Below the pieces are notes generated by a model. It saw only the letters and a list, made by a program, of their open reading frames with translations. It made no database searches and was not told the origin of the DNA. Both the position numbers and the translations under genes were made by a program. Below, piece after piece: positions 2,867 to 59,083 of a stretch of DNA of 64,000 nt. The first letter of the stretch is position 1. Every line of letters starts with the position of its first letter. Location of the stretch: IMG/VR virus record IMGVR_UViG_3300022868_000009, positions 62,001 through 126,000 of that record; one strand, written 5' to 3'.

Positions 2867-2875
2867 ATTGCAAAG

Positions 2876-4377: not shown

Positions 4378-4381
4378 ATTT

Positions 4382-5754: not shown

Positions 5755-5765
5755 AATTATTTTAT

Positions 5766-8164: not shown

Positions 8165-8165
8165 A

Positions 8166-9299: not shown

Positions 9300-9316
9300 T
9301 TAATTTTTAATTGTTT

Positions 9317-9922: not shown

Positions 9923-9924
9923 AA

Positions 9925-10578: not shown

Positions 10579-10619
10579 TTCATTTCATTTATTTTATTTC
10601 CCATTTAGAATGAGAATAT

Positions 10620-20636: not shown

Positions 20637-21089
20637 TTAACCATTCAATTCTCTTTCAGTATCTCTTTCAATATCCCTATTTTTAATAGATTCTTTCTTT
20701 TGAAATAATTTTTTACCTTTAGCCAATGCAATTTCTACTTTAGCTAAACCTTTATCATTAATAAATAATCTTGTTGGTACAATTGTTAACCCTTTTTCAC
20801 TAACACCCTTTTTGAGTTTCTTCAATTGTTTCTTAGTTAATAACAATTTTCTATCACGTTTTGGTTCATGATTATTAATAGTACCCATTTCATATTCAGC
20901 AATATGAAGACTTTTTAAATACAATCCATCTTCTTTAAAAATGCAAAATGAATCTGTAAAAGAAACATTACCATTTCTAATAGATTTAATTTCAGTACCT
21001 AATAATATCATACCAGCTACATATGTATTTATCCACTCATATAAGTATGAGGCTTTTTTATATTTTATATTTATATCTTTATTTTGCAT
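20637..21089 (-). CDS. smpB: SsrA-binding protein SmpB
   Basis: AGMILLGTEIKSIR, NHEPKRDRKLLL, GLTIVP, KVEIALAKGKK, IKNRD. Confidence 0.95.
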   Translation of the reverse strand: MQNKDINIKYKKASYLYEWINTYVAGMILLGTEIKSIRNGNVSFTDSFCIFKEDGLYLKSLHIAEYEMGTINNHEPKRDRKLLLTKKQLKKLKKGVSEKGLTIVPTRLFINDKGLAKVEIALAKGKKLFQKKESIKNRDIERDTERELNG

Positions 21090-30880: not shown

Positions 30881-31117
30881 ATGAAAAAACAAAAAACATT
30901 TACAATTGATATGGATATTTGGGAAAAATTTAATGAAATAAGCAAACAAAAATCTATCAATAAATCTTTATTAATAGAAAATCATTTAAGAGATATCATT
31001 TATTTAAACGAAAACCCAAAACATTTTATTATCGTTGGAGATGAAATAAAATTATTAAAATATTCATTAAATGAAAATGAAATTTATATATTAGACGCAA
31101 AACCAAATATAAAATAA
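30881..31117 (+). CDS. Ribbon-helix-helix DNA-binding protein upstream of endonuclease
   Basis: MKKQKTFTID...F...SKQKSINKSLLIE. Confidence 0.6.
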   Translation: MKKQKTFTIDMDIWEKFNEISKQKSINKSLLIENHLRDIIYLNENPKHFIIVGDEIKLLKYSLNENEIYILDAKPNIK

Positions 31118-33579: not shown

Positions 33580-35226
33580 ATGTTATTAACAAAGAATATT
33601 AAAATTAAAATAAATAATAGGTATATAAAATATTATCAAAATCTTGGATATCAGGTAAAAGGCGGTCAAGAATGTGAAATAAAAATAGAAGATTTATCAA
33701 AAAAAAGCCACGCTTTTGTTGATGTTAAATGTGATATATGTCAAGAAGAAAAAACAATTAAATATTATAATTATACTGAAAATATACTAAATCAGGGTTT
33801 TTACACTTGTAAAAAATGTAAACATCATAAGACAAAAATCACAAATCTAGAGAAATATGGTGTAGAATGTACATTACAATCTGATGATGTTTTAGAAAAG
33901 ATAAAAAATAAAAACATAGAAAAATTTGGCACAGACCATTATTCAAAAACAAATGAATTTAAAGAAAAAATAAAAGAGACAAATCTAGAAAAATATGGTG
34001 TTGAAAGTAATATGCAATCAATCGAATTTAAGGAAAAATCTATATTATTTAATCTGAAAAGTTACGGTGTTGATCATTATTCAAAGACTAATGAATTTAA
34101 AGAAAAAGTAAAAAAAACAAATTTAGAAAAATATGGTGTTGATCATTATTCAAAAACTGATGAATTCAAGGAGAAGTTGTCTAAAAACCATTTTTTAAAA
34201 CTTAAAAAAGAAAACAACAATCTTAAAGAGATAAATGGTGATGAATATGTGATATATTGTGATAAATGTGATAAAGATTATACTATTCATAAATGGTTAT
34301 ATAAAAATAGAAAAAAGAAATATAAAACTAATACTTGTTTATATTGTAATCCTATAAATTCTTCTAAATCTGGAATGGAATTAAAATTATTAGAATTTAT
34401 AAAAGATAATTATAATGAAAAAATTGTTTATGGTAATAGAAAAATTATACCACCTAAAGAATTAGATATTTATTTACCAAATTTAAAATTGGCATTTGAG
34501 TTTAATGGTGTATATTGGCACAACGAATTAAACAAACATAACAAATATCATTTAGAAAAAACAGAAAAATGTCTAGAAAAAGGAATACAATTAATTCATG
34601 TTTTTGAAGATGATTGGATTTATAAACAAGATATAGTAAAATCTAGAATTTTGAATTTAATTGGAAAATCTAAAAAAATATTTGCTCGAAAATGTGAAAT
34701 TAAATTAGTCAATGATAATAAAGTTATTAGAAATTTTCTAGATGAAAATCATTTACAAGGGTTTGTAGGGAGCAAAATAAAATTGGGTTTGTATTATAAT
34801 GATGAATTAGTAAGTTTAATGACTTTTGGAAATTTGAGAAAACCTTTAAATCAGTCAAAAAAGGATGGGTCATTTGAATTATTAAGATTTTGTAATAAAT
34901 TGAGCATTTATGTTATTGGTGGTGCTTCAAAATTATTTAATTATTTCTTAAAAAACTATGAAATTTGTGAAATAATAAGTTATGCGGATAGAAGTTGGAG
35001 TAATGGAAATTTATATGAAAAACTTGGTTTTGAATTTATACATAAAACACAACCTAACTATTATTATATAATAGGCAATCTTAGAAAACATAGATTTAAT
35101 TTCAGGAAAGATAAATTAATTAAAGAAGGTTTTGATTCAAATAAAACCGAACATGAAATAATGTTAGAAAGGGAAATATATCGAATATATGATAGCGGTA
35201 GTTTAAAATATAGTTATTTAATATAA
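33580..35226 (+). CDS. Free-standing putative homing endonuclease (paralogue of 31117 and 38168)
   Basis: TNLEKYGV repeats; ELDIYLP..KLAFEFNGVYWH; RIYDSG. Confidence 0.8.
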   Translation: MLLTKNIKIKINNRYIKYYQNLGYQVKGGQECEIKIEDLSKKSHAFVDVKCDICQEEKTIKYYNYTENILNQGFYTCKKCKHHKTKITNLEKYGVECTLQSDDVLEKIKNKNIEKFGTDHYSKTNEFKEKIKETNLEKYGVESNMQSIEFKEKSILFNLKSYGVDHYSKTNEFKEKVKKTNLEKYGVDHYSKTDEFKEKLSKNHFLKLKKENNNLKEINGDEYVIYCDKCDKDYTIHKWLYKNRKKKYKTNTCLYCNPINSSKSGMELKLLEFIKDNYNEKIVYGNRKIIPPKELDIYLPNLKLAFEFNGVYWHNELNKHNKYHLEKTEKCLEKGIQLIHVFEDDWIYKQDIVKSRILNLIGKSKKIFARKCEIKLVNDNKVIRNFLDENHLQGFVGSKIKLGLYYNDELVSLMTFGNLRKPLNQSKKDGSFELLRFCNKLSIYVIGGASKLFNYFLKNYEICEIISYADRSWSNGNLYEKLGFEFIHKTQPNYYYIIGNLRKHRFNFRKDKLIKEGFDSNKTEHEIMLEREIYRIYDSGSLKYSYLI

Positions 35227-38167: not shown

Positions 38168-39979
38168 TTAATTCTTAAAAATGTATTTATAATTACCACT
38201 ATTATATATTCTATAAATACCTCTTTCTATCATTATTTGATGTTCACTTTTATCTAAATCAAAACCTTCTTTAACCAACACGTCTTTTCTATATCCAAAC
38301 CTATATTTTCTCACACCATCTACTACATAATAATAATTTGGTTTAGAAATATGAGATAATTCAAAACCTAAATTTTCATATAATTTGCCATTTGAATGTG
38401 ATCTATCTGCATAACTTATTATTTTTTTAAAAAAATAATTTTTAGTAAAATGTTTAAACAATTTTGAAGCACCACCAATAACATTAGTATTTAACTTATT
38501 ACAAAATCTTATAAGTTCAAATTCACCTTCTACACTAGAAGAATTTTGAGACTTTCTTTTTTTACCAAAAGTCATTAAAGAAACTAACTCATTTTCATAA
38601 TAAAGACCTAGTTTAATACTAGAACCAACAAAACCTTGTAAATGATTATCATCTAGAAATTTTCTTATCAATTTATTATCTTCAATAACTTTAATTTCAC
38701 ATTTTCTTGCATAAATTCTATTTGGTGTTTTACCTATTTTGTTTAATATTATGGATTTAACTATGTCTTGTTTATACAACCAATCATCTTCCCAAATATG
38801 TGTTAGCTGAACACCTTTTTTAAAACAATTATCTGTTTTATTTAAATGATAATTATTATCTTTATTTAATTCGTTATGCCAATACAAACCATTAAATTCA
38901 AAAGCTAATTTCAAATTTGGTAAATAAATATCTAATTCTAATGGTTTAATAACATCTCTATCTGATGTTTCAATGACACCAGTATAATTTTCTTCAATAA
39001 AACTTAATAATTGTATTTCTAATCCTGATGTGTGTTGATTAATTGGGTTGCAAATAGTACACAATTCAGTTTTACATTTAACTCTATTTGAAAACAAGGA
39101 TGAATTAATAATATAATCATGTCCTTTATCACATAATATTGTATATTCTTTATTATCAAAATCAATATTCAAAAAATTTAAATAACTATAATTACTTAAA
39201 AGATATTTTTTAGTTCTTTTTCTATTATTCTCTTTAATATTTTTTATAACTTTTTCTGTTTGAAAATAATTTTCAACACCATATCTTTCTAAGATTGTAG
39301 TTTTTCTTTTTTCTTTTAATTCATTAGAATATGATGGATTTTCAACACCATAATTTTCCATTAATGATTTTATTGATTTCTCTCTAATTTCTTCTGATTG
39401 TTGAGGATACTCTACACCATACTTTTCTAAATTTGTTTTTTTAATTTTATCTTTTATTTCTTCTGATTCAAACGGATTTTCAACACCATATTTTTCTAGA
39501 TTTGTTTTGGATATTTTATCACGTATCTCTTTATTAGATAGAGAAAATTCAACACCATACTTTTCTAGATTTGTTTGTTTTTGCTTTCTTTTTACACACT
39601 CATTTTGAGTAAAATGTTCGACACCATATTTTTCCAAACTTGTTTTTTTAACTCTATCAACATATTCCTCAGTCTGTGTATAATATTCACTGCCATATTT
39701 TTCAAATGTTGTCTTTTTAACTTTTTCTTGAGCACACTTAGAACTACAAGCATAAAACCCACCATTATTAATATTTTTAACATATTTTTGATACATTAAA
39801 TCCTTTTCATTATTACAAAAATCACATTTTACTTTTATTTTTACATGACTACCATCAGATAAATATTTAGGATGTATATTTAAAATATCTCCCAATTGTA
39901 CATCTTTCGAATATTCTTCTTTTAGTTTACTTAAATTTCTTTTTGTTACTTTAATTAATGTTTTTTCTGTTAAAATCAT
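38168..39979 (-). CDS. Free-standing putative homing endonuclease
   Basis: Many TNLEKYGVE repeats; ELDIYLP..KLAFEFNGLYWH; RIYNSG. Confidence 0.8.
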   Translation of the reverse strand: MILTEKTLIKVTKRNLSKLKEEYSKDVQLGDILNIHPKYLSDGSHVKIKVKCDFCNNEKDLMYQKYVKNINNGGFYACSSKCAQEKVKKTTFEKYGSEYYTQTEEYVDRVKKTSLEKYGVEHFTQNECVKRKQKQTNLEKYGVEFSLSNKEIRDKISKTNLEKYGVENPFESEEIKDKIKKTNLEKYGVEYPQQSEEIREKSIKSLMENYGVENPSYSNELKEKRKTTILERYGVENYFQTEKVIKNIKENNRKRTKKYLLSNYSYLNFLNIDFDNKEYTILCDKGHDYIINSSLFSNRVKCKTELCTICNPINQHTSGLEIQLLSFIEENYTGVIETSDRDVIKPLELDIYLPNLKLAFEFNGLYWHNELNKDNNYHLNKTDNCFKKGVQLTHIWEDDWLYKQDIVKSIILNKIGKTPNRIYARKCEIKVIEDNKLIRKFLDDNHLQGFVGSSIKLGLYYENELVSLMTFGKKRKSQNSSSVEGEFELIRFCNKLNTNVIGGASKLFKHFTKNYFFKKIISYADRSHSNGKLYENLGFELSHISKPNYYYVVDGVRKYRFGYRKDVLVKEGFDLDKSEHQIMIERGIYRIYNSGNYKYIFKN

Positions 39980-49205: not shown

Positions 49206-49535
49206 ATGAAATTCTTTTACCTAATATTACTATTTTTACTATCCCTCACAATTTCCGCACAAAAAATTTACAAAGTTGATTATAAATATGATGCAGATAT
49301 AAAAGTATATGTTGCTGATTATAAATATGATGCAGATTTGATTGTTTATATCGTAGATTATAAATATGATGCAAATAAAGATGGTTTATGGTATTTCGTA
49401 AATTATAAATATGATGCAGATAAGACAATTTATTTTGTAGATTATAAATACGATGCAAATTTAATAATTTACTTCTGTGATTATAAGTATGATGTAGGTT
49501 GGAAAAATAAATCTAAAATACATTTATTAAGATAA
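49206..49535 (+). CDS. Secreted repeat protein (DUF6150-like)
   Basis: Signal peptide then six VDYKYDAD-type repeats. Confidence 0.65.
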   Translation: MKFFYLILLFLLSLTISAQKIYKVDYKYDADIKVYVADYKYDADLIVYIVDYKYDANKDGLWYFVNYKYDADKTIYFVDYKYDANLIIYFCDYKYDVGWKNKSKIHLLR

Positions 49536-49547
49536 ATATATAATTTA

Positions 49548-49751
49548 ATGAAATGGGATAAATTTATTGATGATACTTTCCAACTTAAAGAATGGGATTA
49601 TATAGATCCTAAAATAATAAATTACATTAAAGATAATTTTTTGACACTTAATAAAGATAATGTTAAAAAGTTACATCTTCCCAAAAAATTAACACACCAT
49701 ATTTCAATTAGATTAGAATATTTAGAAGAATTTTCTAATATTAGACCTTAA
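49548..49751 (+). CDS. Hypothetical protein
   Basis: Short ORF after AATATATA motif. Confidence 0.4.
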   Translation: MKWDKFIDDTFQLKEWDYIDPKIINYIKDNFLTLNKDNVKKLHLPKKLTHHISIRLEYLEEFSNIRP

Positions 49752-50119
49752 TTAATATTCTCAAAGAATTCTTTAACAGGTAATAATATATAACGTGTGC
49801 GCGCGCATGCGTATATAAAAAAATTTTTCAAAAGATTAAAATTTTTAAAAATTTTATTTCATTAATATTATCTTTAACGGTAATACTTATTTTCCTAAGA
49901 ATAAAGAATTTTCAACTTATTGAATTTTTTAGTATAATTAGTATAATCTTTTAATTTTAGAAAAAAGTGACTTTTTAAGTCAAATATATAATTTTCACAC
50001 TTTTATAAATTTTTAAAATTTTTAAACTTTTTAAAATTTTGAAAGTACAAGAAAATAGATTACGAAAAAATAATATTTTTTTAAAGATTTTTCGAAATCA
50101 AAACGTTCTTTAAAATATT

Positions 50120-51050
50120 GTAAAATATAGTCTGTGCTTGGGCAGACGTTCATCTTCGGATGGAGCAGATAAAACATCGTAAGGTGTCGAAAGAGAGGAA
50201 GGTCACTTATTCTCGCCAATAGTCTTCGGATTATGGTCAATCTAAGCAAGTCTCATTTTTGTCTTGACCAACAAGACAGCCTCAATAGAAAGGGGATAAG
50301 ATGAAACAACGTGAGTAACGATCTTTGGTAAGAATAAGATGGCTCAATTGCCCGCAAGGGGAACAAAAGTTATCAAATATAGAATGGGGACATTCCAATA
50401 TCGTTTAATCCACTCATTAAGTGTTCGTTGATAGATAAGAGATAGAATAGTAGTTCGAATGTGGAAAGTTAGAGCATTATTCAGTTTCAAAGGTGTTGAA
50501 AGATGTCTTAACAAACGGCACAGTAAGTCCTCCGGGCTGAAACGCATACGAAGGGTCGTATTTTGTAAGGTGAAACTTATGAATCGGTGGACAGGCACTT
50601 TGTGGTGATATCATTTTTTATTAGCTCACAATGGTAGAGCAGTAGTATTCTAACTAAAGGTAGATGGTTCAATTCCATCATAAAAAAAGCAAAGTCCCTG
50701 TCCGTCTGTTAAGTAAAGGTGCTTAAAACTTTACACTTCGGTGAATAAAGTGGATTCAAAGCTCGCAAGGTAGAGAATCTTTGATACAGTAGCCTCAACT
50801 TTTAACCCTAGCAGGTTATTAACGCCACGATAGTGGTGAGTGTACGCAAAATATCGAGTAACTTAATAGTACTAGTGATGTAACCACATAAAAAGTTACA
50901 GTACAGCTGGTGTACATAGTTGCCTTTCGAGGGATTATGTGGACAATTCAGGAACGAAGAATAGCAACTCTTTGATAATCTGAAGAAAGCAAAACATATA
51001 ATAAACTGTGTGTTTTACCAGTATGACAGTTTTTAGTCTCAAAATTGTTT
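50120..51050 (+). ncRNA. Large ornate ncRNA, GOLLD-like (boundaries approximate)
   Basis: No credible ORF; GC-richer than flanks; UUCG/GCAA hairpins at 50151-50162, 50219-50234, 50351-50360, 50734-50743, 50923-50932; embedded tRNA-like element; terminal stem with AGUCUC loop at 51026-51048; next to tRNA genes. Confidence 0.6.
50615..50687 (+). pseudogene. tRNA-like element inside the large ncRNA (all-AU acceptor stem, 6-nt anticodon loop)
   Basis: TTTTTAT/ATAAAAA acceptor, GCTC/GAGC D-stem, GATGG-TTCAATT-CCATC T-arm. Confidence 0.75.
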
Positions 51051-51450
51051 CTCTATCAAGATAAAAACCTTGACGTGGTGATAGAGCTTTAAACTAATAT
51101 TTATCAAATGTGAAAAAAGTAGTAGAAATTAAAAGACGCAACACGCAGCCCGTTCTCTGCGCTACTTCACAAAAATGTGAACGATAAAAATCTTCACATT
51201 TAAATACACCAAGAATAACACCATCACTGTAGCCCTAAAGGAGTGATGTTGTCGCATAAAAACGATTAGTGTTAGTGTGTGTTTGAGAAGACGACGGGGG
51301 ATTTCACAAAAGTAACATGAATCAAGTAGTGTGAAATAAGAAATTCCTCCAAGTTTTCTCGGAAAATTTTTTTATGCAAGAAATAATTTGTATATTGTCA
51401 AAAATAGAGAATAAATATTTAATATATAAAAAATAGTAAAAACAGAAACA

Positions 51451-51537
51451 ATGAATAATACTTTTAAACATAATAGTTCATCTTTTCATAAGTGGTTTAG
51501 CCGCTTCGGATCGGGAATGTTATGCCTTAAAAGTTAA
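51451..51537 (+). CDS. Putative attenuator leader peptide 1 (MNNTFKHNSSSFHKWFSRFGSGMLCLKS)
   Basis: 28-codon ORF ~30 nt after TAATATATA motif; overlaps antiterminator strand; F/H/W codons match downstream tRNAs. Confidence 0.7.
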   Translation: MNNTFKHNSSSFHKWFSRFGSGMLCLKS

Positions 51538-51566
51538 GATTAAAAAATATTAATCAACAAAGGGAC

Positions 51567-51604
51567 AAACTCGATTCTAACAAGATTCGGGTTTTTTGTT
51601 TTTT
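51567..51604 (+). terminator. Intrinsic terminator upstream of tRNA-His/Trp/Phe (attenuator)
   Basis: AAACTCGATTCT-AACA-AGATTCGGGTTT then T-tract. Confidence 0.8.
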
Positions 51605-51626
51605 ATAAACGTTCTTAAAAATATAT

Positions 51627-51702
51627 GGTGGTTATAGTGTTAGTGGTAGCACGGCAGGTTGTGGTTCTGTTAGGATGGATTCAAATTCCATTAATCACCC
51701 CA
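51627..51702 (+). tRNA. tRNA-His(GTG), encoded G-1 and CCA
   Basis: Cloverleaf; GCAGG-TTGTGGT-TCTGT anticodon arm. Confidence 0.92.
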
Positions 51703-51712
51703 AATTTAACAC

Positions 51713-51783
51713 AGGTCTATAGTGTAACGGTAGCATAAGTGATTCCAAACCACTTGGTCCGGGTTCAAATCCTGGTAGGCCTG
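51713..51783 (+). tRNA. tRNA-Trp(CCA)
   Basis: AGGTCTA/TAGGCCT acceptor; TTCCAAA loop; CCGGG-TTCAAAT-CCTGG. Confidence 0.92.
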
Positions 51784-51852
51784 CGAGAAGTTTAAATATG
51801 GTTAAATGAAGGATGGTTAAAAGGTAGAAAAATGAAATATTAATACAAATTT

Positions 51853-51925
51853 GGAACCGTGGTGTAGGTGGTCTGCACGATACTCTGAAGAAGTATAGGT
51901 ACCCGTTCAACTCGGGTCGGTTCCA
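51853..51925 (+). tRNA. tRNA-Phe(GAA)
   Basis: GGAACCG/CGGTTCC acceptor; ATACT-CTGAAGA-AGTAT. Confidence 0.9.
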
Positions 51926-52002
51926 CTTTAAACTTTTAAATTTTAATATATATTAATGTGAAGAAAGAACCAGTTTTAATGAAAAATAATAAAAATTAAC
52001 AA

Positions 52003-52749
52003 ATGAAAAAATATACACAATTTAGTAAATCTTTAGAAAAAATCAATCAAAATATGGAATTATTTGAAAAAGCTATCGATCAAAATCAAAAAGAAAAAAT
52101 AGATAGATATATTAATGCAAACAATTACAAAAAAGTTCTATCAGAACTAAAACAAATTATTTTTAATTTAAAAAAAGAAATTAAAAATTCCAATTTTGAT
52201 GATTTCATTTATAAACAGAACAATAAAGATATAGAAATAATATATAATCCGACTATTCGTGGTATTTTAACCTATTTAGATGGTAAAAGAGTAGAATTTG
52301 AATATGGAAAAGAAGAGAATCAACAAAAAATCTTAAACACTATCTATATTGATGGTGAAAGAGACCCATTTTTAGATATAACTATTCAACCACCATTTAA
52401 TCAGATACATATTAATAATGGTTTGCCAGTTTTTATGAAAGGTCTAGGATTAGGTAAAAAAGTTTACAAAAAACTAATTAAAGATTTTGGTTATCTTTCT
52501 TCTTTTAAAGGAATAAAACCTTCTATTGAAAGTGATTTGGTTTGGGATACTTTAGCTGATGATAGAGAATTGTTCACTTTTGTGAATGATAACAATATCA
52601 TTTGTTTTTGGAATGAAGTAGATTATGATATTATAATTATTAAATTGAAAGAATTTTACAAAATAAAAGGACAAAAAATCTTTGATAACGATTTTAAAAA
52701 GTTATATAACTTAACTGATGAAAAAATAGAACAAATAATTAATATATAA
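52003..52749 (+). CDS. Hypothetical protein, possible GNAT-like motif
   Basis: MKGLGLGKKVY resembles acetyl-CoA-binding motif A. Confidence 0.5.
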   Translation: MKKYTQFSKSLEKINQNMELFEKAIDQNQKEKIDRYINANNYKKVLSELKQIIFNLKKEIKNSNFDDFIYKQNNKDIEIIYNPTIRGILTYLDGKRVEFEYGKEENQQKILNTIYIDGERDPFLDITIQPPFNQIHINNGLPVFMKGLGLGKKVYKKLIKDFGYLSSFKGIKPSIESDLVWDTLADDRELFTFVNDNNIICFWNEVDYDIIIIKLKEFYKIKGQKIFDNDFKKLYNLTDEKIEQIINI

Positions 52750-52767
52750 AGAAAATCAATTTTAAAC

Positions 52768-53016
52768 ATGAAAATTAAAAGATATAATGAATCATTAATT
52801 GATAATGATAATAACACTAGAGAAGATTTCAATGAAGAAATTGATGATCTAATATCAGAATTAAAGATAAGATATAATAATTTTAATAATTTAATTGATT
52901 CATACAAAATAATAGAAAAAAGTAAAACAGAAGAATGGGAAAAAGTTAGAAATGAACTAAGAGGCGCATTTGATGGTTTTAAAAATGAATTAATACAAAA
53001 AATTAAAAAATTTTAA
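52768..53016 (+). CDS. Hypothetical protein (MKIKRYNES tag)
   Basis: ORF after TAATATATA motif. Confidence 0.55.
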   Translation: MKIKRYNESLIDNDNNTREDFNEEIDDLISELKIRYNNFNNLIDSYKIIEKSKTEEWEKVRNELRGAFDGFKNELIQKIKKF

Positions 53017-53019
53017 ATA

Positions 53020-53094
53020 ATGATTATAATTAACATAAATAGTAAATCGAAAAAGAATAGTCGTCTGAAAACGGCTCGGAATTGTATTACCTAA
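53020..53094 (+). CDS. Putative attenuator leader peptide 2 (MIIININSKSKKNSRLKTARNCIT)
   Basis: 24-codon ORF; AGT AAA TCG AAA AAG AAT AGT cluster matches downstream Lys/Ser tRNAs; contains 1:2 hairpin and antiterminator strand. Confidence 0.7.
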   Translation: MIIININSKSKKNSRLKTARNCIT

Positions 53095-53116
53095 ATTTTT
53101 AGGTACAAAGAATTAC

Positions 53117-53146
53117 AAACCGAGTCTGAAAAGATTCGGTTTTTTT
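53117..53146 (+). terminator. Intrinsic terminator 2 nt before tRNA-Lys (attenuator)
   Basis: AAACCGAGTCT-GAAA-AGATTCGGTTT plus T-tract. Confidence 0.85.
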
Positions 53147-53148
53147 AT

Positions 53149-53226
53149 TGGCCATTAGCTCAGTAGGTTTAGAGCATCTGCCTTTTAAGCAGAGAGTCCA
53201 GGGTTCGATCCCCTGATGGCCAACCA
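53149..53226 (+). tRNA. tRNA-Lys(TTT) with encoded CCA
   Basis: TGGCCAT/ATGGCCA; TCTGC-CTTTTAA-GCAGA; CAGGG-TTCGATC-CCCTG. Confidence 0.95.
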
Positions 53227-53228
53227 AT

Positions 53229-53301
53229 GGATCTGTAGCTCAGTTGGTAGAGCTTCTGCCTTTTAAGCAGAAAGTCCAGGGTTCGAGTCCGACTAGGTCC
53301 A
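53229..53301 (+). tRNA. tRNA-Lys(TTT), second copy with mispaired T-stem
   Basis: GGATCTG/TAGGTCC; same anticodon arm; T-stem CAGGG/CCGAC pairs only 2 bp. Confidence 0.7.
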
Positions 53302-53305
53302 CTAA

Positions 53306-53420
53306 GGCTTATAACAAATAGGTTGTATTTATAGAGCATTTGTCGGGTTACCGCATGTCACTAAAATGTATATTTTAAGAGTTACTAGAGATATATGAGG
53401 TTCGAATCCTTAATAAGCCA
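53306..53420 (+). ncRNA. tRNA-like RNA (acceptor stem and T-arm intact, enlarged non-canonical centre)
   Basis: GGCTTAT/ATAAGCC-A; TGAGG-TTCGAAT-CCTTA; 115 nt. Confidence 0.65.
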
Positions 53421-53424
53421 CTAT

Positions 53425-53508
53425 GGAAAGCGTCCGGTTGGACGAGGGGCTACTCTTGAAAAGTAGTAATGGGTTACACCATTAGGGGTTCGAATCCCTT
53501 GCTTTCCG
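53425..53508 (+). tRNA. tRNA-Ser(TGA)
   Basis: CTACT-CTTGAAA-AGTAG; long variable arm; G discriminator. Confidence 0.93.
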
Positions 53509-53512
53509 CTAT

Positions 53513-53600
53513 GGAAGAGTACCCAAGTTGGTGAAGGGGCTGGTTTGCTAAACCAGTAGGTCTGAAATACGGCGCGTGGGTTCGAGCCCCACTTCTTCCG
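53513..53600 (+). tRNA. tRNA-Ser(GCT)
   Basis: CTGGT-TTGCTAA-ACCAG; long variable arm; G discriminator. Confidence 0.93.
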
Positions 53601-53648
53601 CAATTAGGTTTGAAACTCAGTTGGTGACCTACTAAGAAAGATATTTCA

Positions 53649-53831
53649 TTAAACTTCTTGCCAATGGTTAACACCATTTTTATCAGTTTGTATTTCCCAC
53701 ATATTACCATCATTACCTTTCATTCTAGTTCCTTCATCATGCCATGTTGCACTATCTGTAGGTCCTTTTCTACTTTCTGAATGTCTAACTGAAGCAGCAC
53801 TTGCTTCTTTAAAAGTTTTTAAATGTTTCAT
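53649..53831 (-). CDS. Small tagged protein (MKHLKTFKE) with KGNDGNMW motif
   Basis: 60 aa ORF in tagged-gene array. Confidence 0.6.
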   Translation of the reverse strand: MKHLKTFKEASAASVRHSESRKGPTDSATWHDEGTRMKGNDGNMWEIQTDKNGVNHWQEV

Positions 53832-53832
53832 A

Positions 53833-54081
53833 TTATTTAGTCATATATTTTATACCATGTTTTCGTAGTTTTTTAACTACTTTGTCATAGTTCACTTCAT
53901 TTTCATATCCGTATAATATATCCGGGATGAGATCGTCAAGGTGTTCTTCAACCTCTGAAAGAAGTTTAGCACCAGAATAATCATGTCTCATGTCATAATA
54001 TACGTCATCTAAAAATTCTTCAAGTTCTATTTTCATATCACTTAATTTAAGTGATTCATTAAAAGTTTTTAAATGTCTCAT
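53833..54081 (-). CDS. Small tagged protein (MRHLKTFNES)
   Basis: ORF. Confidence 0.6.
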   Translation of the reverse strand: MRHLKTFNESLKLSDMKIELEEFLDDVYYDMRHDYSGAKLLSEVEEHLDDLIPDILYGYENEVNYDKVVKKLRKHGIKYMTK

Positions 54082-54102
54082 TATTTATTTATTTATTTAT
54101 TT

Positions 54103-54468
54103 TTATAGTAATCCTAATTTATTTGATTGTAGATATTCATCTATTGTAACTCCAATATTTTTTATATACCAATCTTCTATTGTAATTGGTTTATAAAATG
54201 CATTATTATTTACATTAACATCAAAATCCAATATTCCAGAATTTGTCTTATATATATATAAAGATACAATTTCACATTTACTTTCTACTTGATCTCCCCA
54301 AGCACAAGAAACTTCATCTTCTATAATTTCGGTTAATTGTTCATATATTGGTAATTCATAATATTTTTCTATTTGTTTAATGGTAACTTCTAAATTATCA
54401 TTATTCTTAATATCAGTTATTGTAATATTAAAATGTTTATTTTCTAAATATGTCTTTAGGTATTTCAC
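54103..54468 (-). CDS. Tagged protein (MKYLKTYLE start, NKLGLL end)
   Basis: GTG-start ORF; shared terminal motifs. Confidence 0.6.
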   Translation of the reverse strand: MKYLKTYLENKHFNITITDIKNNDNLEVTIKQIEKYYELPIYEQLTEIIEDEVSCAWGDQVESKCEIVSLYIYKTNSGILDFDVNVNNNAFYKPITIEDWYIKNIGVTIDEYLQSNKLGLL

Positions 54469-54535
54469 ATATTTGTATATTAAAAATAAGGATTAAAAAT
54501 ATTTTGTATAAAATATAGAACCAGGTTTATTAAAA

Positions 54536-55021
54536 TCACTGTTTTTTCCACCATAGAGTTTGCCAATCAGGATAAACAAAACCTTCTGAATCTGGTTTGA
54601 TTTGCGTATAACTTTCATATCCTTCCATTAAATCTATCGACTCTTTATATTCTTCTCTTTCCGAATTATCCAACATCAAATAACCACCCTTCTTTAATTT
54701 AGGAAGAGCTTCCTTTACACAGTTAACCCTATCTCTTCCATCTACTAAAATAAAGTCGAAATGTTCATCTGGGAAAATAGAAACATATACACTATAATCC
54801 CTGTTATGTTGATGAAGGGTAACATTTCCGGGAAGGGATTCAGATACTTTTTTAATCCATTCACTGTCATGTTCTATACTAATCAAATGACTCACTCGAT
54901 CAGCTAACCATTTAGTAGAAGCACCTGCACCAAACTCCAAGCAATGCATATCCTTTGTCAAATAAGACTCAAGGAACTCAATTTCACCTTCGGTTATCCA
55001 AATTATTTTTCTATCAATCAT
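54536..55021 (-). CDS. Class I SAM-dependent methyltransferase
   Basis: LEFGAGAST, SIEHD, FDFILVDGRDR, GGYLMLDNS. Confidence 0.85.
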   Translation of the reverse strand: MIDRKIIWITEGEIEFLESYLTKDMHCLEFGAGASTKWLADRVSHLISIEHDSEWIKKVSESLPGNVTLHQHNRDYSVYVSIFPDEHFDFILVDGRDRVNCVKEALPKLKKGGYLMLDNSEREEYKESIDLMEGYESYTQIKPDSEGFVYPDWQTLWWKKQ

Positions 55022-55086
55022 AATTTTTATCTATATATATTAAAGAAATTATTTTATTTTCTTAAAAATTTTTGTATATTATAACA

Positions 55087-55317
55087 AATTAATCTAATCG
55101 ACTATACGCTGATTTTATAAAAAATTAGAGGAAAGTCGGGACAATTTTGCTTAAGGCAGGAGACTTTGGTCGTTCGTACTGCCGAGGTTGCAACTCAAAC
55201 AGATCTAGGAGGTGAGCAATTCTATAATGATCGGGTTAGAGGCACTCTTCGGAGAAGTGTAAACACTTAGATAAATGTATAGATAAAACAAAATCCCGCT
55301 TATGGACTAGGTTAATT
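55087..55317 (+). ncRNA. rnpB: Minimal RNase P RNA (~230 nt)
   Basis: GAGGAAAGTCGGGAC...AACAAAATCCCGCTTAT P4 signature; P1 55087-55099/55305-55317; P2 CTATAC/GTATAG; P3 hairpin. Confidence 0.85.
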
Positions 55318-55340
55318 TTAACTTTTAAATTATTTAAATT

Positions 55341-55625
55341 ATGCAAGATAAATGTAAAATATGTGGTCGTAATGAAACAACATCATTTCATCATTTAATA
55401 CCAGTAACATTACATACTAAAAAGTGGTTCAAAAAAAATTACGAAAAAGACTATATGAAATCACACGGTATAGACTTATGCAAACAATGTCATAAGGCTA
55501 TACATAAATTTTGGGATGAAAAAACTTTGGGCAAAAAATTTAATACATTAAAAAGTTTATTAGAAAATCAAAAAATTAAAAAACACATTGAATGGGTTAT
55601 AAAACTAAAACATAATAAAAAATGA
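55341..55625 (+). CDS. Small HNH-like protein
   Basis: CKICGR...FHHLIP...LCKQCHKAIH. Confidence 0.7.
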   Translation: MQDKCKICGRNETTSFHHLIPVTLHTKKWFKKNYEKDYMKSHGIDLCKQCHKAIHKFWDEKTLGKKFNTLKSLLENQKIKKHIEWVIKLKHNKK

Positions 55626-55903
55626 CAAAAGACAAAACTAAAGACGAATCTAAAAACGAATCTAAAGAAAAAGAAGAAAATTTATACTCAATTATTGTAT
55701 ATAATGACGAAGTTAATACATTTGAACATGTTATTGGTTGTCTTATTAAATACTGTAAACATGAATTAACACAAGCAGAACAATGTACCATGATTATACA
55801 CAATAATGGTAAATGTGATGTTAAAAAAGGCACATTTAAAGAATTAGAAACTCCTTATTATGCTTTACTTGATTCTGGGTTATCTGCTGAAATTGAAAAT
55901 TAA
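55622..55903 (+). CDS. clpS: ClpS N-degron adaptor (Bacteroidota type)
   Basis: IIVYNDEVNTFEHVI..L...C.H...QAEQC..IIH.NGKCDVK.G. Confidence 0.88.
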   Translation: MTKDKTKDESKNESKEKEENLYSIIVYNDEVNTFEHVIGCLIKYCKHELTQAEQCTMIIHNNGKCDVKKGTFKELETPYYALLDSGLSAEIEN

Positions 55904-55985
55904 ATATATGTCTAATAACATATCCTAATTTTTGACTTATTAGAAAATTTCTCGTATATTATTATAAATACTAAAACTTCAAATC

Positions 55986-57293
55986 ATGAGAAATATACAA
56001 AAATTATCAGAAAAAGAATTAATAGTACATTTAAAATCTATCTATAATAAACAGATAGATATTTATGATAAATTTGAAAAAACAGGTGAAATTGAACCAA
56101 TTATTACCGATTTTGATGATCAAGATGCATATAAATATTTTATGCAATATGCAATCTTTAAAACTCACCCAAACGCAATAGTAAAATTTAAATTTTTTAA
56201 CCGTGGAAAACATAAATTTCCAGTCGGTTCAGATTATCATATTAAAAAACAAATAGAATCTATGAAAAATCTTAGATTCACTCCTGAAATAGAAAGATCA
56301 TTTAGAAAAAAATTTTCAAATATGAAAGGTGAATCTTATTTTGATGAATCTTTTTATGGTTTTTTAAGAAGTTATAGATACGATCCATCTGAAGTTAAAG
56401 TAACTCAAACAGGAGAAGATATCGAAATAGAAATAACTGGTTCTTGGTTAAAAACAATTTATTGGGAAACACAAATAATGCCGATTTTAACAGAAACTTG
56501 GTATATGTTAACTGATCAATATAAAAATATTCATAATTTTGATCATCTATATGATACACACAGAGACAAATATCGAAGTTTTATAACAGCCGAATCTAAT
56601 ATTGCAGAATTTGGTTTAAGAAGAAGATATTCAAAACTAATACAAGAATTTATCAATATACATTTTATGTGGGAATCACCAGCTAGATATATTGGTACGT
56701 CTAATTGTATGTTCGCTAGAAAATTTAATGTTAAAGCCATTGGAACACAAGCTCATGAATGGATAATGTTTCATGCCGCAAAATATGGACCAGAACTAGC
56801 AAATAAGATATCTTTAGAAAATTGGGTTAAAGTTTACAGAGGAGAATTAGGTATTGCGTTATCTGATACTTATGGTACAGACAATTTCTTAAAATCATTT
56901 GATACTTTACATAGTAAATTATTTGATGGTGTTAGATGGGATTCTGGTGATTTTAAATTATTTACTGATAAAATAATTGGACACTATAAATCATATGGAA
57001 TTAATCCTAAATCCAAAACAATTGTCTATTCTGATGGTATAAATTCATTTTTAAAAATACGAGATATTATAAGATATGCAAGTGATAAAATTAAATGCAC
57101 GTTAGGAATTGGTACTTATTTAACAAATGATATTGGTGTACCAACTATGAATATTGTTATTAAAATGACAGAAGCTAAACCTGAAAAAATGGATTGGAGA
57201 TATTGTATAAAGACATCTGATTCATCTGGTAAATATACTTATACTGACAAAAAAACATTAAACAGATACTTAGAAGATTTGAATATAAATTAA
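55986..57293 (+). CDS. pncB: Nicotinate phosphoribosyltransferase
   Basis: DAYKYFMQ, EFGLRRR, GTSN, GTQAHEW, ALSDTYG, GVRWDSGD, YSDG, GIGTYLTND, NIVIKM. Confidence 0.92.
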   Translation: MRNIQKLSEKELIVHLKSIYNKQIDIYDKFEKTGEIEPIITDFDDQDAYKYFMQYAIFKTHPNAIVKFKFFNRGKHKFPVGSDYHIKKQIESMKNLRFTPEIERSFRKKFSNMKGESYFDESFYGFLRSYRYDPSEVKVTQTGEDIEIEITGSWLKTIYWETQIMPILTETWYMLTDQYKNIHNFDHLYDTHRDKYRSFITAESNIAEFGLRRRYSKLIQEFINIHFMWESPARYIGTSNCMFARKFNVKAIGTQAHEWIMFHAAKYGPELANKISLENWVKVYRGELGIALSDTYGTDNFLKSFDTLHSKLFDGVRWDSGDFKLFTDKIIGHYKSYGINPKSKTIVYSDGINSFLKIRDIIRYASDKIKCTLGIGTYLTNDIGVPTMNIVIKMTEAKPEKMDWRYCIKTSDSSGKYTYTDKKTLNRYLEDLNIN

Positions 57294-58219: not shown

Positions 58220-59083
58220 ATGAAAAATATAATAAATTACGACAAAGTACTTGAAAATTCAAGATTTTTACTAAAAGAAAAAATTACAAGAACTAAACTT
58301 AAATCATTAGTATTGGGTATTAGTGGTGGAGTTGATTCAGCAATTGTTGCAGCAATTGCTAAACCTATATGTGATGAATTAAATATTCCTTTAATAGGAA
58401 GATATATTCATATAGAAAGTAATAAGAAAGAAGAAAAAGAAAGAGCTGAAGATATTGGAAAAGCGTTTTGCACTGATTTCCAATCAATTGATCTTACAGA
58501 ATACTTTGATACATTAAAAAATCTAGATGAAATGGATAATGAAGGTTCTCCTTATTCTGAATATGATTATCAATCAAAATTAATTAGACTTGGTAATATA
58601 AAAGCTAGAACAAGAATGATTTATCTTTATAATTTAGCTTCAAAAAATGGTGGTTTAGTATTAGGTACAGACAATTTAACTGAATATTATTTGGGATTTT
58701 GGACTTTGCACGGTGATGTTGGTGATTTTGGTTTAATTCAAAATCTTTGGAAGTCTGAAGTACATGAATTAACATTACATTTAGCTAAAAGTTTAAATGA
58801 AAAAGGTAAAGTGTTAGTTGATTGTGCAATGGCAAATGCTACTGATGGTCTTGGAATAAGTGAGACTGATCTAGAACAAATTATGCCAGATTGGAAAGAA
58901 AGACATAATACAACTGCAAGTGGTTATTCAGAAATTGATAAAAAATTACAATCTTATTTAAAAGATATTAGTAAAGGAGAAAACATTTCAAAATATAATA
59001 ATGATCCAGTAATTGAAAGACATAGATCATCTTTCTTCAAAAGAATAAACCCAGAAAGTATAGATAGAGAAGAATTAATTTAA
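58220..59083 (+). CDS. nadE: NH3-dependent NAD+ synthetase
   Basis: LGISGGVDSA, GNIKARTRM, GTDNLTE..LGFWTLHGD, KSEV, TDGL. Confidence 0.92.
   Translation: MKNIINYDKVLENSRFLLKEKITRTKLKSLVLGISGGVDSAIVAAIAKPICDELNIPLIGRYIHIESNKKEEKERAEDIGKAFCTDFQSIDLTEYFDTLKNLDEMDNEGSPYSEYDYQSKLIRLGNIKARTRMIYLYNLASKNGGLVLGTDNLTEYYLGFWTLHGDVGDFGLIQNLWKSEVHELTLHLAKSLNEKGKVLVDCAMANATDGLGISETDLEQIMPDWKERHNTTASGYSEIDKKLQSYLKDISKGENISKYNNDPVIERHRSSFFKRINPESIDREELI

What the first reader, a model, noticed from the sequence alone, without database searches (positions are those of the whole stretch)
51420..55317. Proposed system: demand-sensing tRNA replenishment as counter-defence
This is an inference joining the two attenuated tRNA clusters with the phage's own RNase P RNA (55087-55317) and SmpB (20637-21089). 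Established: host defences such as PrrC and PARIS AriB cleave tRNA-Lys, and phage tRNAs can rescue infection. Leader-controlled clusters would let the phage detect loss of specific tRNAs through ribosome stalling and supply replacements only then. Its RNase P could mature them and SmpB could help clear stalled ribosomes.
Basis: inference. Interest (0 to 1): 0.8.

Follow-up and report, generated by a model that had tools for sequence, protein, structure and literature searches.

The report
Ribosome-sensed switches gating phage tRNA genes
A 345-kb phage puts short "test" reading frames, made of the very codons its own tRNAs read, in front of its tRNA gene clusters, so the genes are probably transcribed only when those codons are read slowly. 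It also carries a stripped-down RNase P ribozyme, and I found no published report of either feature.

Summary
The window holds two tRNA clusters, His-Trp-Phe and Lys-Lys-Ser-Ser. Each is preceded by a short ORF and an intrinsic terminator. It also holds a 229-nt RNase P RNA that lacks the specificity domain, and an intact SmpB gene.

Comparative data turn the "attenuated clusters" guess into a well-supported finding. I collected 51 distinct homologous leader-terminator-tRNA units from related large phage contigs, falling into 12 leader types. In 12 representatives, every amino acid with a tRNA in the cluster has a codon in the leader (59 of 59). The true leader/cluster pairing beat all 200,000 shuffled pairings. 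Cognate codons sit in the ORF frame, in the 45 nt just 5' of a segment that pairs with the terminator's 5' arm (an antiterminator). The first tRNA often starts 3-15 nt after the terminator's T-run, so it can only be made by read-through.

The small RNase P RNAs form a covarying family, and most sit inside phage tRNA arrays.

What is not shown: that the purpose is counter-defence rather than codon-supply homeostasis, and that SmpB, 30 kb away, belongs to the same system. This is a new variant of leader-peptide attenuation, with tRNA genes as cargo, and it is of high interest.

The parts
51387..51398 (+). Promoter-like motif TTTGTATATTGT, 53 nt upstream of leader 1. It is homologous to the TAnnTTTG-type motif upstream of the leaders in related phages.
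   Evidence: Only two exact copies occur in the window. The other, at 55071-55082, lies 8 nt before the RNase P RNA. This is not significant on its own. Related leaders carry CGTATTTAT..TATATTTGTA. Weak evidence.
51451..51537 (+). Leader ORF 1 (28 codons). The regulatory run is F12-H13-K14-W15-F16 at 51484-51498, with F5-K6-H7 at 51463-51471.
   Evidence: There are 7 His/Trp/Phe codons among the 15 codons just 5' of region 2, and 0 among the other 12. A homologous leader in L287 (MTVFKKHTFKFKWHFSHNGFGM...) precedes tRNA-Phe.
51507..51519 (+). Region 2 of attenuator 1 (CGGAUCGGGAAUG). This is the antiterminator strand, and it lies inside the ORF.
   Evidence: It pairs with the terminator's 5' arm and flank at dG -12.8, against -7.3 for shuffled controls. 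It forms 14 pairs in the nascent RNA unless a ribosome has passed codon 16.
51570..51597 (+). Intrinsic terminator 1 (CUCGAUUC-UAACAA-GAUUCGGG-UUUUUU).
   Evidence: In free RNA the terminator is intact. With a ribosome placed at codons 8-14 it is replaced by the antiterminator.
51628..51926 (+). tRNA cluster 1: His(GUG), Trp(CCA), Phe(GAA).
   Evidence: The first tRNA starts 31 nt after the T-run.
53020..53094 (+). Leader ORF 2 (24 codons). The regulatory run is S8-K9-S10-K11-K12-N13-S14 at 53041-53061. It uses AGU and UCG Ser codons, and AAA and AAG Lys codons.
   Evidence: There are 7 Lys/Ser codons among the 15 codons 5' of region 2, and 0 of 8 elsewhere. On its own the enrichment is weak (P = 0.08).
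53072..53084 (+). Region 2 of attenuator 2 (CGGCUCGGAAUUG).
   Evidence: Duplex with the terminator's 5' arm is dG -14.2, against -5.5 for shuffled controls. It forms 12 pairs in nascent RNA until the ribosome passes codon 15.
53117..53146 (+). Intrinsic terminator 2 (AAACCGAGUC-UGAAAA-GAUUCGGUUU-UUUU).
   Evidence: tRNA-Lys begins 3 nt after it, which leaves no room for a separate promoter.
53149..53601 (+). tRNA cluster 2: Lys(UUU) x2, a degenerate tRNA-Tyr-like gene with a 29-nt insert (53306-53421), Ser(UGA) and Ser(GCU).
55090..55318 (+). RNase P RNA consisting of the catalytic domain only. CR-I is at 55128-55142 and CR-V at 55288-55302 (together forming P4). P1-P3 and P5 are present. The P6 pseudoknot pairs 55147-55152 with 55214-55219. 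P15-P17 carry the L15 GGU at 55232-55239, and J18/2 (AGAUAAAUG) is at 55269-55277. P7-P14 are replaced by a stub of about 40 nt.
20637..21089 (-). SmpB, the tmRNA partner protein. It is present, but its link to the attenuators is not shown.
   Evidence: Pfam PF01668 at E 2.9e-50. phrog_6791 at E 4.6e-41.

Best explanation
Each tRNA cluster is gated by a ribosome-mediated transcription attenuator.

How it works: transcription starts upstream of a short leader ORF. That ORF's central codons are the ones read by the tRNAs encoded downstream. About 10-15 nt past the last such codon lies region 2, which is complementary to the 5' arm of an intrinsic terminator (region 3). The first tRNA follows that terminator directly.
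- If the leader is translated quickly, the ribosome covers region 2 by the time region 3 emerges. The terminator then forms and the tRNA genes stay silent.
- If any of the cognate codons is decoded slowly, because that tRNA is scarce, cleaved or uncharged, the ribosome stalls short of region 2. Regions 2 and 3 pair, the polymerase reads through, and the whole cluster is transcribed.

The result is a feedback loop that sets phage tRNA output by the cell's current ability to decode those codons.

The read-through precursor carries a 5' leader of about 150-200 nt, which RNase P must remove. The phage supplies its own S-domain-less RNase P RNA, which probably uses the host's RnpA protein.

Shown: the sequence anatomy, the conservation, the leader/tRNA covariation and the predicted alternative structures. 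Inferred: translation of the leader, stalling, read-through and ribozyme activity.
For: 1. Leader composition tracks cargo.
- Binomial P for seven types: 0.006, 0.08, 0.006, 1e-7, 0.04, 0.007 and 0.055.
- The true pairing ranks 1 of 5040 permutations.
- With 12 types, 0 of 200,000 shuffled pairings reach the observed score.
- 59 of 59 cluster amino acids are present in their leader, P about 10^-6.

2. Frame control. In all 7 types tested, cognate codons are most frequent in the ORF frame.

3. Position. Cognate codons lie in the 45 nt 5' of region 2. For the YK (Tyr/Lys) type this is 228/450 there against 30/314 from region 2 onward. The window's two leaders show 7/15 against 0/12, and 7/15 against 0/8.

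4. Antiterminator.
- Mean duplex dG is -13.5 against -6.3 kcal/mol for shuffled controls, across 51 units, always in the 3' part of the ORF.
- The conserved block AUCGGGAAUG is read in different frames in different leaders, so it is conserved as RNA.
- Region 2 co-varies with the terminator flank: ACGGGUUCU pairs with AGAACCCG.

5. Ribosome-position folding. The antiterminator is allowed up to F16 in leader 1 and S14/R15 in leader 2, and blocked beyond those codons. For leader 1 the equilibrium fold also flips.

6. Promoter space. The first tRNA starts 3-15 nt after the T-run in many units.

7. Terminator in cells. The same hairpin serves as an ordinary terminator after protein genes in two Cytophagales genomes.

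8. RNase P RNA.
- Rfam match.
- The free N:N pair in P4 is complementary in 13 of 14 phage copies: AU 6, GC 4, CG 3.
- P1, P2 and P3 are kept with different sequences.
- The gene has same-strand tRNAs within 1.5 kb in 7, and within 150 nt in 7, of the 12 other loci holding small copies.
Against: - There are no expression data. The transcription start, leader translation and read-through are all inferred.
- The host is unknown. It is probably in Bacteroidota, where no Shine-Dalgarno signal is expected, so initiation cannot be checked from sequence.
- Leader 2 alone is only weakly enriched (P = 0.08). Its terminator stays the more stable fold at equilibrium in every ribosome position, so switching there must be kinetic.
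- The four long leaders of the GAGTC-terminator group contain the cognate amino acids but are not enriched for them (P = 0.18-0.66).
- One unit, L198, has a tRNA-Cys but no Cys codon. Some YK units carry an extra Leu, Val or Met tRNA.
- I picked the type representatives. The background amino-acid frequencies come from this window only. The leader types are partly homologous, so the P values are approximate.
- For the RNase P RNA: the score is below Rfam's threshold, CR-V reads ACAAAA rather than ACAGAA, no RnpA-like ORF is in the window, and activity without an S-domain is usually reduced (PMC5839562).
Confidence: 0.75

Rival explanations
1. Purpose-level reading. The attenuators act as an alarm for host anticodon nucleases. 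tRNA cleavage stalls ribosomes on the leader, and replacement, perhaps nuclease-resistant, tRNAs are then made, matured by the phage RNase P, while SmpB clears stalled ribosomes. This is compatible with the mechanism above and differs only in what the switch is for.
For: The commonest regulated sets are Tyr+Lys(UUU/CUU) and Thr(UGU)/Asn(GUU)-containing clusters. Lys(UUU), Thr(UGU) and Asn(GUU) are PARIS AriB targets. Tyr is the retron-Eco7 target and Lys the PrrC target. Phage tRNAs rescue infection (PMC12409363, PMC11555353, PMC11464382, PMC10264068). A leader that mixes several codon types would respond to loss of any one tRNA.
Against: Lys, Tyr, Asn, Ile, Phe, Ser and Thr are decoded from the A/T-rich codons that a 24% GC phage needs most, so ordinary demand explains the same sets. 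His, Trp, Cys, Asp, Gly, Leu, Pro and Gln are regulated as well. No defence or anti-defence gene was found next to the units. Nuclease resistance of the phage tRNAs was not tested. SmpB is 30 kb away.
Confidence: 0.25
2. There is no switch. The short ORFs are small-protein genes, or untranslated, each with its own constitutive terminator. The tRNAs are made from leaky read-through or from unseen promoters.
For: Short ORFs of 22-60 codons occur at 25% of random positions in these loci. The promoter scans are uninformative.
Against: This does not explain the leader/tRNA covariation, the frame specificity, the conserved pairing between region 2 and the terminator arm, or the gaps of 3-15 nt between terminator and tRNA. 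Outside the cognate runs the peptide sequences vary freely.
Confidence: 0.07
3. Antitermination happens without the ribosome. The nearly invariant hairpin CCCGAUUC-GAAA-GAUUCGGG and the AUCGGG box would be bound by a phage protein, or by tRNA itself in a T-box-like way, and that binding would decide read-through.
For: The terminator and region-2 sequences are unusually conserved across leader types and phages. That degree of conservation is more typical of a protein-binding site than of a plain helix.
Against: No T-box or other riboswitch match appears at E<=10 in 49500-56500. Cognate codons are numerous, in frame with an ATG and a stop, and positioned as a ribosome model predicts. The three-way constraint, in which region 3 must pair with both region 2 and region 4, can by itself slow sequence drift. 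The same hairpin is an ordinary terminator in Cytophagales.
Confidence: 0.1
4. This concerns the RNase P part only. The small RNA would not be a working enzyme. It would be a decoy that soaks up host RnpA, or competes with host RNase P, so as to shut down host tRNA maturation.
For: The S-domain is missing. No phage RnpA was found in the window. C-domain-only RNAs are poorer catalysts (PMC5839562).
Against: The catalytic-core motifs are kept: CR-I, CR-V, J18/2 and the L15 GGU that binds the 3'-CCA of tRNA. The helices covary across 14 diverse phages. The genes sit inside tRNA arrays, and other large viral contigs carry full-length copies in the same position. All of this points to a function in maturing phage tRNAs.
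Confidence: 0.12

Closest known systems
Leader-peptide (ribosome-mediated) transcription attenuators of amino-acid operons and of pheST (E. coli trpL, hisL, pheL, pheM). This comparison rests on established knowledge; see also PMC1183508 and PMC3082878.
   Same: A short ORF rich in codons cognate to the regulated product. Overlapping antiterminator and terminator helices. The decision is set by where the ribosome is when the terminator's 5' arm emerges.
   Different: The cargo is the tRNA genes themselves, not biosynthetic enzymes or a synthetase. Leaders mix up to about 7-11 amino acids to match multi-tRNA clusters. The elements are phage-encoded. In the nascent-RNA folds the untranslated state gives read-through, whereas trp shows super-attenuation. 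My literature searches found no such case.
T-box riboswitches
   Same: They sense tRNA status and control an intrinsic terminator upstream of translation-apparatus genes.
   Different: T-boxes bind uncharged tRNA directly through one specifier codon and a conserved T-box sequence, with no ribosome involved. There is no Rfam T-box match here, and the cognate codons form a translated frame.
Phage tRNA arrays used against tRNA-targeting defences (T5 and others: PMC11464382, PMC12409363, PMC11555353, PMC10264068)
   Same: Phage-encoded Lys, Tyr, Thr and Asn tRNAs can replace host tRNAs.
   Different: In T5 the protective tRNA-Tyr is highly expressed (abstract of PMC11555353; a section heading there attributes this to a strong promoter). 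Here expression would be conditional, through a leader that tests decoding.
Bacterial type A RNase P RNA (Rfam RF00010), the natural S-domain-less type T RNA of Pyrobaculum (from my own knowledge), and engineered C-domain ribozymes (PMC5839562)
   Same: A P1-P6 and P15-P17 core with CR-I/CR-V, J18/2 and the L15 GGU. Like type T and the engineered C-domains, it lacks P7-P14.
   Different: It is bacterial-type A in sequence yet only 229 nt long and phage-encoded. Most of its small relatives lie inside phage tRNA arrays. It scores 50.5 bits against a gathering score of 100.
SmpB and tmRNA genes of huge phages (PMC7162821)
   Same: An intact SmpB in a phage of more than 300 kb. Relatives L004, L007 and L041 carry tmRNA next to tRNA genes.
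   Different: Nothing new. No tmRNA is in this window, and there is no positional link to the attenuators.

Membership tests
Ribosome-mediated leader-peptide attenuator | A short ORF upstream of the regulated genes, enriched in codons cognate to the regulated product | tested here: met
   Leader 2 alone is weak (P = 0.08).
Ribosome-mediated leader-peptide attenuator | An intrinsic terminator between the leader and the regulated genes, with no intervening promoter | tested here: met
   The gap to the first tRNA is 3 nt (cluster 2), 31 nt (cluster 1), and 3-15 nt in many relatives.
Ribosome-mediated leader-peptide attenuator | A mutually exclusive antiterminator helix, whose availability depends on ribosome position | tested here: met
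   By computation only. For leader 2 the switch appears only in the nascent-RNA (kinetic) fold.
Ribosome-mediated leader-peptide attenuator | Read-through rises in vivo when the cognate charged tRNA is limiting | not testable with these tools
   This needs reporter assays, 3'-end mapping or in vitro transcription-translation experiments.
Ribosome-mediated leader-peptide attenuator | The regulated genes are amino-acid biosynthesis or aminoacyl-tRNA synthetase genes (the classical cargo) | tested here: not met
   The cargo is tRNA genes. I therefore file it as a new variant, not an ordinary member.
T-box riboswitch | A conserved T-box sequence, specifier loop and stem I architecture | tested here: not met
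   No T-box match at E<=10 in 49500-56500.
Bacterial RNase P RNA, type A (RF00010) | A P4 helix formed by CR-I (GAGGAAAGUC.GG) and CR-V (ACA.AA.CC.GCUUA) | tested here: met
   The free pair covaries in 13 of 14 phage copies.
Bacterial RNase P RNA, type A (RF00010) | P1-P3, P5, the P6 pseudoknot, and P15-P17 with the L15 GGU and J18/2 | tested here: met
   P6 and P15-P17 were read by eye from the sequence.
Bacterial RNase P RNA, type A (RF00010) | The specificity domain (P7-P14) | tested here: not met
   About 140 model positions are replaced by about 41 nt. The distance from CR-I to the end of CR-V is 175 nt, against about 290-310 nt in full-length copies.
Bacterial RNase P RNA, type A (RF00010) | Rfam gathering score | tested here: not met
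   50.5 bits against 100. Nothing is found in whole-window scans.
Bacterial RNase P RNA, type A (RF00010) | Pre-tRNA 5' cleavage activity | not testable with these tools
   This needs an in vitro cleavage assay.
SmpB (PF01668) | A full-length match to the family profile above its cut-off | tested here: met
   170 bits against a cut-off of 27.
GOLLD RNA (RF02032), next to the finding | A match to the family model at the gathering score | tested here: inconclusive
   93.9 bits against 150, E 3e-24, over the full model length, with a nested tRNA.

The most novel reading that the evidence does not exclude
The leaders, the tRNA clusters and the S-domain-less RNase P RNA would form one inducible regulon. 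It would detect attack on the host tRNA pool by anticodon nucleases, or by the phage's own host shut-off, codon by codon, and would then rebuild a phage-specific decoding set. The small RNase P would be specialised for, or needed by, the precursors in which the terminator hairpin abuts the tRNA. That would be a self-contained viral system for sensing and repairing the tRNA pool.
Probability: 0.2. Interest if true: 0.95.

Novelty: new variant of a known kind. Interest (0 to 1): 0.85.

Why it matters
Why phages carry tRNA genes has been argued for decades, between codon compensation and escape from tRNA-cleaving defences. How those genes are regulated is almost unknown. Here the sequence points to a regulatory logic: the ribosome tests the codons, and the result decides whether the matching tRNA genes are transcribed. 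I found no published example of leader-peptide attenuation acting on tRNA genes.

The idea is directly testable, with codon swaps in a 90-nt leader. The leaders also give a readable "label" of which tRNAs a cluster is meant to supply. That label could be mined across phage metagenomes.

The phage RNase P RNAs are natural bacterial-type ribozymes that lack the specificity domain. They bear on the minimal RNase P and on how far large phages take over tRNA biogenesis. They are currently missed by standard annotation. Examples are the unannotated homologue in the published 735-kb phage LR756501 and this copy's Rfam score below threshold.

Tried and rejected
- tmRNA in the window: none found by ARAGORN or Rfam. 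The rest of the genome could not be read.
- T-box or another riboswitch in the leaders: none.
- RnpA-like ORF, searched by the RNR motif: none.
- Sigma-70 promoter scan: no enrichment over shuffles.
- The motif TTTGTATATTRT shared by leader 1 and the RNase P gene: two exact copies only, not significant with one mismatch.
- L015, L022 and L026 are 100% identical to the window. They add no independent evidence.
- A BLAST hit of a full-length RNase P RNA to 'Microcystis phage MaAM05' lies among fabI, engB and mtgA. It looks like bacterial sequence, so I discarded it.
- The LR756501 homologue of the small RNase P RNA is not recognised by Rfam. It aligns at 77% mean column identity (the BLAST match was 71.7%) with compensated P4 changes.
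- RNAalifold on a plain MAFFT alignment recovered only P4 and two short helices. I checked P1-P3 sequence by sequence instead.
- Pfam and PHROG searches of the ORFs between and after the clusters gave nothing informative beyond a methyltransferase and an HNH endonuclease.
- Co-occurrence of the small RNase P RNA with attenuators in other phages could not be assessed, because only about 10-kb loci are held.

Full report
**What the window is.** The 64-kb window is 21-34% GC (mostly about 24%) and densely coding. It is 100% identical to parts of two IMG/VR viral contigs of 344,634 and 348,222 bp. It encodes a DNA primase and an SbcC-like nuclease with PHROG matches. It also encodes NAD-salvage enzymes, ClpS and SmpB, and a protein with a type IX secretion sorting domain. 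I take it to be a jumbo phage of a Bacteroidota host. The host assignment is an inference.

- ARAGORN and Rfam find tRNA-His, Trp and Phe at 51628-51926, and tRNA-Lys, Lys, Ser and Ser at 53149-53601.
- Each cluster is preceded by a short ATG ORF, at 51451-51537 and 53020-53094.
- Each ORF is followed by a hairpin plus T-run, at 51570-51597 and 53117-53146.
- The RNase P RNA at 55090-55318 is invisible in whole-window scans. When the short stretch is searched it matches bacterial type A RNase P end to end, at 50.5 bits and E 6e-15. P1-P5, P15-P17, CR-I, CR-V and J18/2 are aligned, and the whole specificity domain is deleted.
- SmpB at 20637-21089 (-) is intact.

**The leaders are a family, and their codons follow the cargo.** The two leader regions align with each other and share the blocks CGG-UCGG-A-UGU and AAGAUUCGG-UUUUUU. 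Scanning viral and metagenome collections with these blocks gave 51 distinct homologous units with complete upstream sequence. They lie in many contigs of up to 365 kb. In every one, a short ORF ends 5-90 nt before the terminator and tRNA genes follow. Examples:
- ...YYYGKKSYKK... precedes tRNA-Tyr and tRNA-Lys (34 distinct leaders).
- ...ISTSTSSRNGNSIFCSIFTGRNN... precedes Thr, Cys, Ile, Ser, Phe, Gly and Asn, with Arg further on (15 leaders).
- ...MEDDCKVIGFTDIIDW precedes Asp, Asp.
- A Leu-rich leader precedes tRNA-Leu.
- ...LAFIDCLAVLFDALDAL... precedes Cys, Val, Leu x4, Phe x2 and Asp.
- A relative of the window's first leader (MTVFKKHTFKFKWHF...) precedes tRNA-Phe.

**Statistics on the covariation.**
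- Against the amino-acid frequencies of this window's long ORFs, cognate residues are in excess in seven types: P = 0.006, 0.08, 0.006, 1e-7, 0.04, 0.007 and 0.055.
- The real leader/cluster pairing is the best of all 5040 permutations.
- With 12 types, none of 200,000 random pairings reaches the observed score.
- All 59 amino acids that have a tRNA in their cluster occur in the matching leader. The expected number is 47.8, and P for all being present is about 10^-6. For amino acids without a tRNA, 114 of 181 are present.
- The excess is specific to the ORF frame in all seven types tested.
- All 51 units keep an ORF of at least 22 codons, against 25% of random positions.

**Caveats on the statistics.** The types are partly homologous, and I chose the representatives. 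Four long leaders contain the cognate residues but are not enriched for them. One unit (L198) lacks a Cys codon although it carries tRNA-Cys.

**The anatomy is that of an attenuator.**
- A segment in the 3' part of each ORF (region 2, mostly AUCGGG, sometimes ACGGGUUCU) is complementary to the terminator's 5' arm and its flank. Mean duplex energy is -13.5 kcal/mol, against -6.3 for shuffled ORFs. That is about as strong as the terminator helix itself.
- The conserved block is read in different frames in different leaders, so it is conserved as RNA and not as peptide.
- Where the flank differs (AGAACCCG), region 2 differs to match.
- Cognate codons are concentrated in the 45 nt just upstream of region 2. 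In the window this is 7 of 15 codons there against 0 of 12 elsewhere (leader 1), and 7 of 15 against 0 of 8 (leader 2). In the Tyr/Lys type it is 228/450 against 30/314 from region 2 onward.

**Folding with a ribosome in place.**
- I folded the nascent RNA up to the end of region 3, with a ribosome footprint placed at each codon in turn. The antiterminator forms (12-14 pairs) as long as the ribosome is at or before F16 (leader 1) or S14/R15 (leader 2). It is blocked once the ribosome has moved further. The boundary falls at the end of each main run of cognate codons, although leader 1 has F19 and leader 2 has K17 beyond it.
- For leader 1 the full-length equilibrium fold also flips from terminator to antiterminator when the ribosome sits at codons 8-14.
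- For leader 2 the terminator stays the more stable fold, so the choice there would be kinetic.

**Other points bearing on the mechanism.**
- tRNA-Lys starts 3 nt after terminator 2. In many relatives the first tRNA starts 3-15 nt after the T-run. These tRNAs can therefore only be made by reading through the terminator.
- The same hairpin sequence occurs in only two of about 185,000 reference genomes. Both are Cytophagales, and in both it sits as an ordinary terminator after protein genes. This supports its terminator function and hints at the host lineage.
- Leader 1 is also rich in Ser and Lys. Sixteen of its 27 residues after the start Met (28 codons in all) are H, W, F, K or S. It may therefore govern a transcript running through both clusters, with leader 2 as a second checkpoint. 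That is a guess.

**The most likely mechanism.** Fast translation of the leader puts the ribosome on region 2 and lets the terminator form. Slow decoding of any cognate codon leaves region 2 free to pair with the terminator's 5' arm, and the tRNA cluster is transcribed. This is a feedback loop on decoding capacity for exactly the tRNAs supplied. It is the logic of the trp, his and pheST leaders applied to tRNA genes. I found no report of this in the searchable literature.

**The RNase P RNA.**
- A pattern made of CR-I and CR-V with the small spacing found 14 viral stretches and one shorter copy.
- The unconstrained N:N pair in P4 is complementary in 13 of 14 copies: AU 6, GC 4, CG 3.
- P1, P2 and P3 are present with different sequences in each.
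- J18/2 (AGAUNAAUG) and the GGU of L15 are conserved.
- In the window copy, the P6 pseudoknot (UUGCUU with GAGCAA) can be read directly from the sequence.
- Most of the 12 other small copies lie within or next to tRNA arrays on the same strand, and seven have a tRNA within 150 nt.
- Full-length type A copies also occur inside tRNA arrays in many large viral contigs.
- No paper in the library uses any phrase for a phage-encoded RNase P. The huge-phage survey that reports tmRNA and SmpB does not mention RNase P.
- The published 735-kb phage genome holds an unannotated, diverged homologue.

I infer that the RNA matures the phage's own tRNA precursors, including the long leader-bearing read-through transcripts, probably together with the host's RnpA. 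No RnpA motif was found in the window. A decoy role is possible but less likely.

**What is not supported.**
- Nothing ties SmpB to the attenuators. It is 30 kb away on the other strand. No tmRNA is in the window, although relatives carry one beside their tRNA genes. tmRNA-SmpB does not act on ribosomes paused within an intact leader (established knowledge).
- The counter-defence purpose rests only on the overlap between the regulated tRNAs and known nuclease targets: Lys, Tyr, Thr and Asn. That overlap is equally expected from the codon demand of a very A/T-rich phage.
- I therefore rate the mechanism at about 0.75 and the counter-defence purpose at about 0.25.

**Verdict.** The core finding is leader-peptide attenuators that gate phage tRNA clusters according to how well the matching codons are being read. 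It comes together with a family of phage RNase P RNAs that lack the specificity domain. It is a new variant of a known regulatory kind, apparently unreported, widespread in a clade of large phages, and testable with simple constructs.

Noticed in passing
window 50548-51016 (structured, G+C-richer region about 50300-51330), + strand: A GOLLD-like large RNA (93.9 bits, E 3e-24, below the gathering score of 150) with a nested tRNA carrying a CUA (amber-reading) anticodon at 50614-50688. It lies just upstream of leader 1.
   Followed up: partly
window 50614-50688, and whole-window ORFs: The phage carries an amber-suppressor-type tRNA, yet ORFs of at least 100 codons in this window end in TAA 48, TGA 19 and TAG 7 times. 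TAG therefore still seems to act as a stop here. Recoding in other (late?) genes was not examined.
   Followed up: partly
window 53306-53421, + strand: A degenerate tRNA-Tyr(GUA)-like gene with a 29-nt insert in the anticodon loop and a poor D arm, between the Lys and Ser tRNAs. Leader 2 has no Tyr codon, whereas the related Tyr/Lys leaders are Tyr-rich. This looks like leader and cargo changing together.
   Followed up: partly
L007 9715-9790: A tRNA-like sequence between the terminator and tRNA-Tyr. It has a normal D arm and T arm but about 13 extra nt in the anticodon loop, ahead of a UUU anticodon. ARAGORN does not call it.
   Followed up: no
L294 3604-3626 and L295 900-922 (Cytophagales MAG chromosomes): The phage attenuator's terminator sequence (CCCGATTCG[A/C]AAGATTCGGGTTTTTTT) occurs in cellular genomes only twice. 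In both it is an ordinary terminator after protein genes, one of them a sigma-70-like gene. This is a possible host clue.
   Followed up: partly
L297-L347 (viral contigs up to 497 kb): Full-length type A RNase P RNA motifs occur in 51 IMG/VR stretches. About half lie inside dense tRNA arrays in large contigs. The others, on short high-GC contigs from isolate genomes, look like host DNA next to prophages.
   Followed up: partly
L348 (LR756501.1 181344-181513, the published 735-kb phage): An unannotated homologue of the small RNase P RNA, with an altered CR-I (GAGGAAGUUCGCGAC) and matching changes in CR-V. Rfam does not recognise it.
   Followed up: partly
L349 (MW495066.1, 'Microcystis phage MaAM05', 112320-118472): This stretch of a GenBank phage record carries fabI, engB, mtgA and an RNase P RNA-like match. 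It looks like bacterial rather than phage DNA.
   Followed up: no
window 52768-53016 (+) and 53649-54468 (-): A set of small ORFs with similar N-termini (MKIKRYNESL, MKHLKTFKE, MRHLKTFNESL, MKYLKTYLEN). They appear to be a paralogous family of unknown function around the tRNA clusters.
   Followed up: no
window 54536-55021 (-), 55341-55625 (+): A class I SAM-dependent methyltransferase and an HNH endonuclease flank the RNase P RNA gene. ClpS (55622-55903), nicotinate phosphoribosyltransferase (55986-57293) and NAD synthase (58220-59083) follow.
   Followed up: partly
window 31117-32694, 33580-35226 (+), 38168-39979 (-): Three paralogous large proteins carrying DUF7487.
   Followed up: no
window 180-17400 (-), 22091-23020 (-), 27073-28122 (+): A long minus-strand block includes sugar-nucleotide enzymes: a HAD hydrolase fused to a nucleotidyltransferase, and an NAD-dependent epimerase/dehydratase. 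Also present are a lectin-fold protein with a type IX secretion sorting signal and a histidine kinase. This is unusual phage cargo, and the sorting signal points to a Bacteroidota host.
   Followed up: partly
L004 2636-3016, L007 4342-4702, L041 2543-2928: Relatives that carry the attenuators (L004, L007) or the small RNase P RNA (L041) encode tmRNA genes within their tRNA regions.
   Followed up: partly
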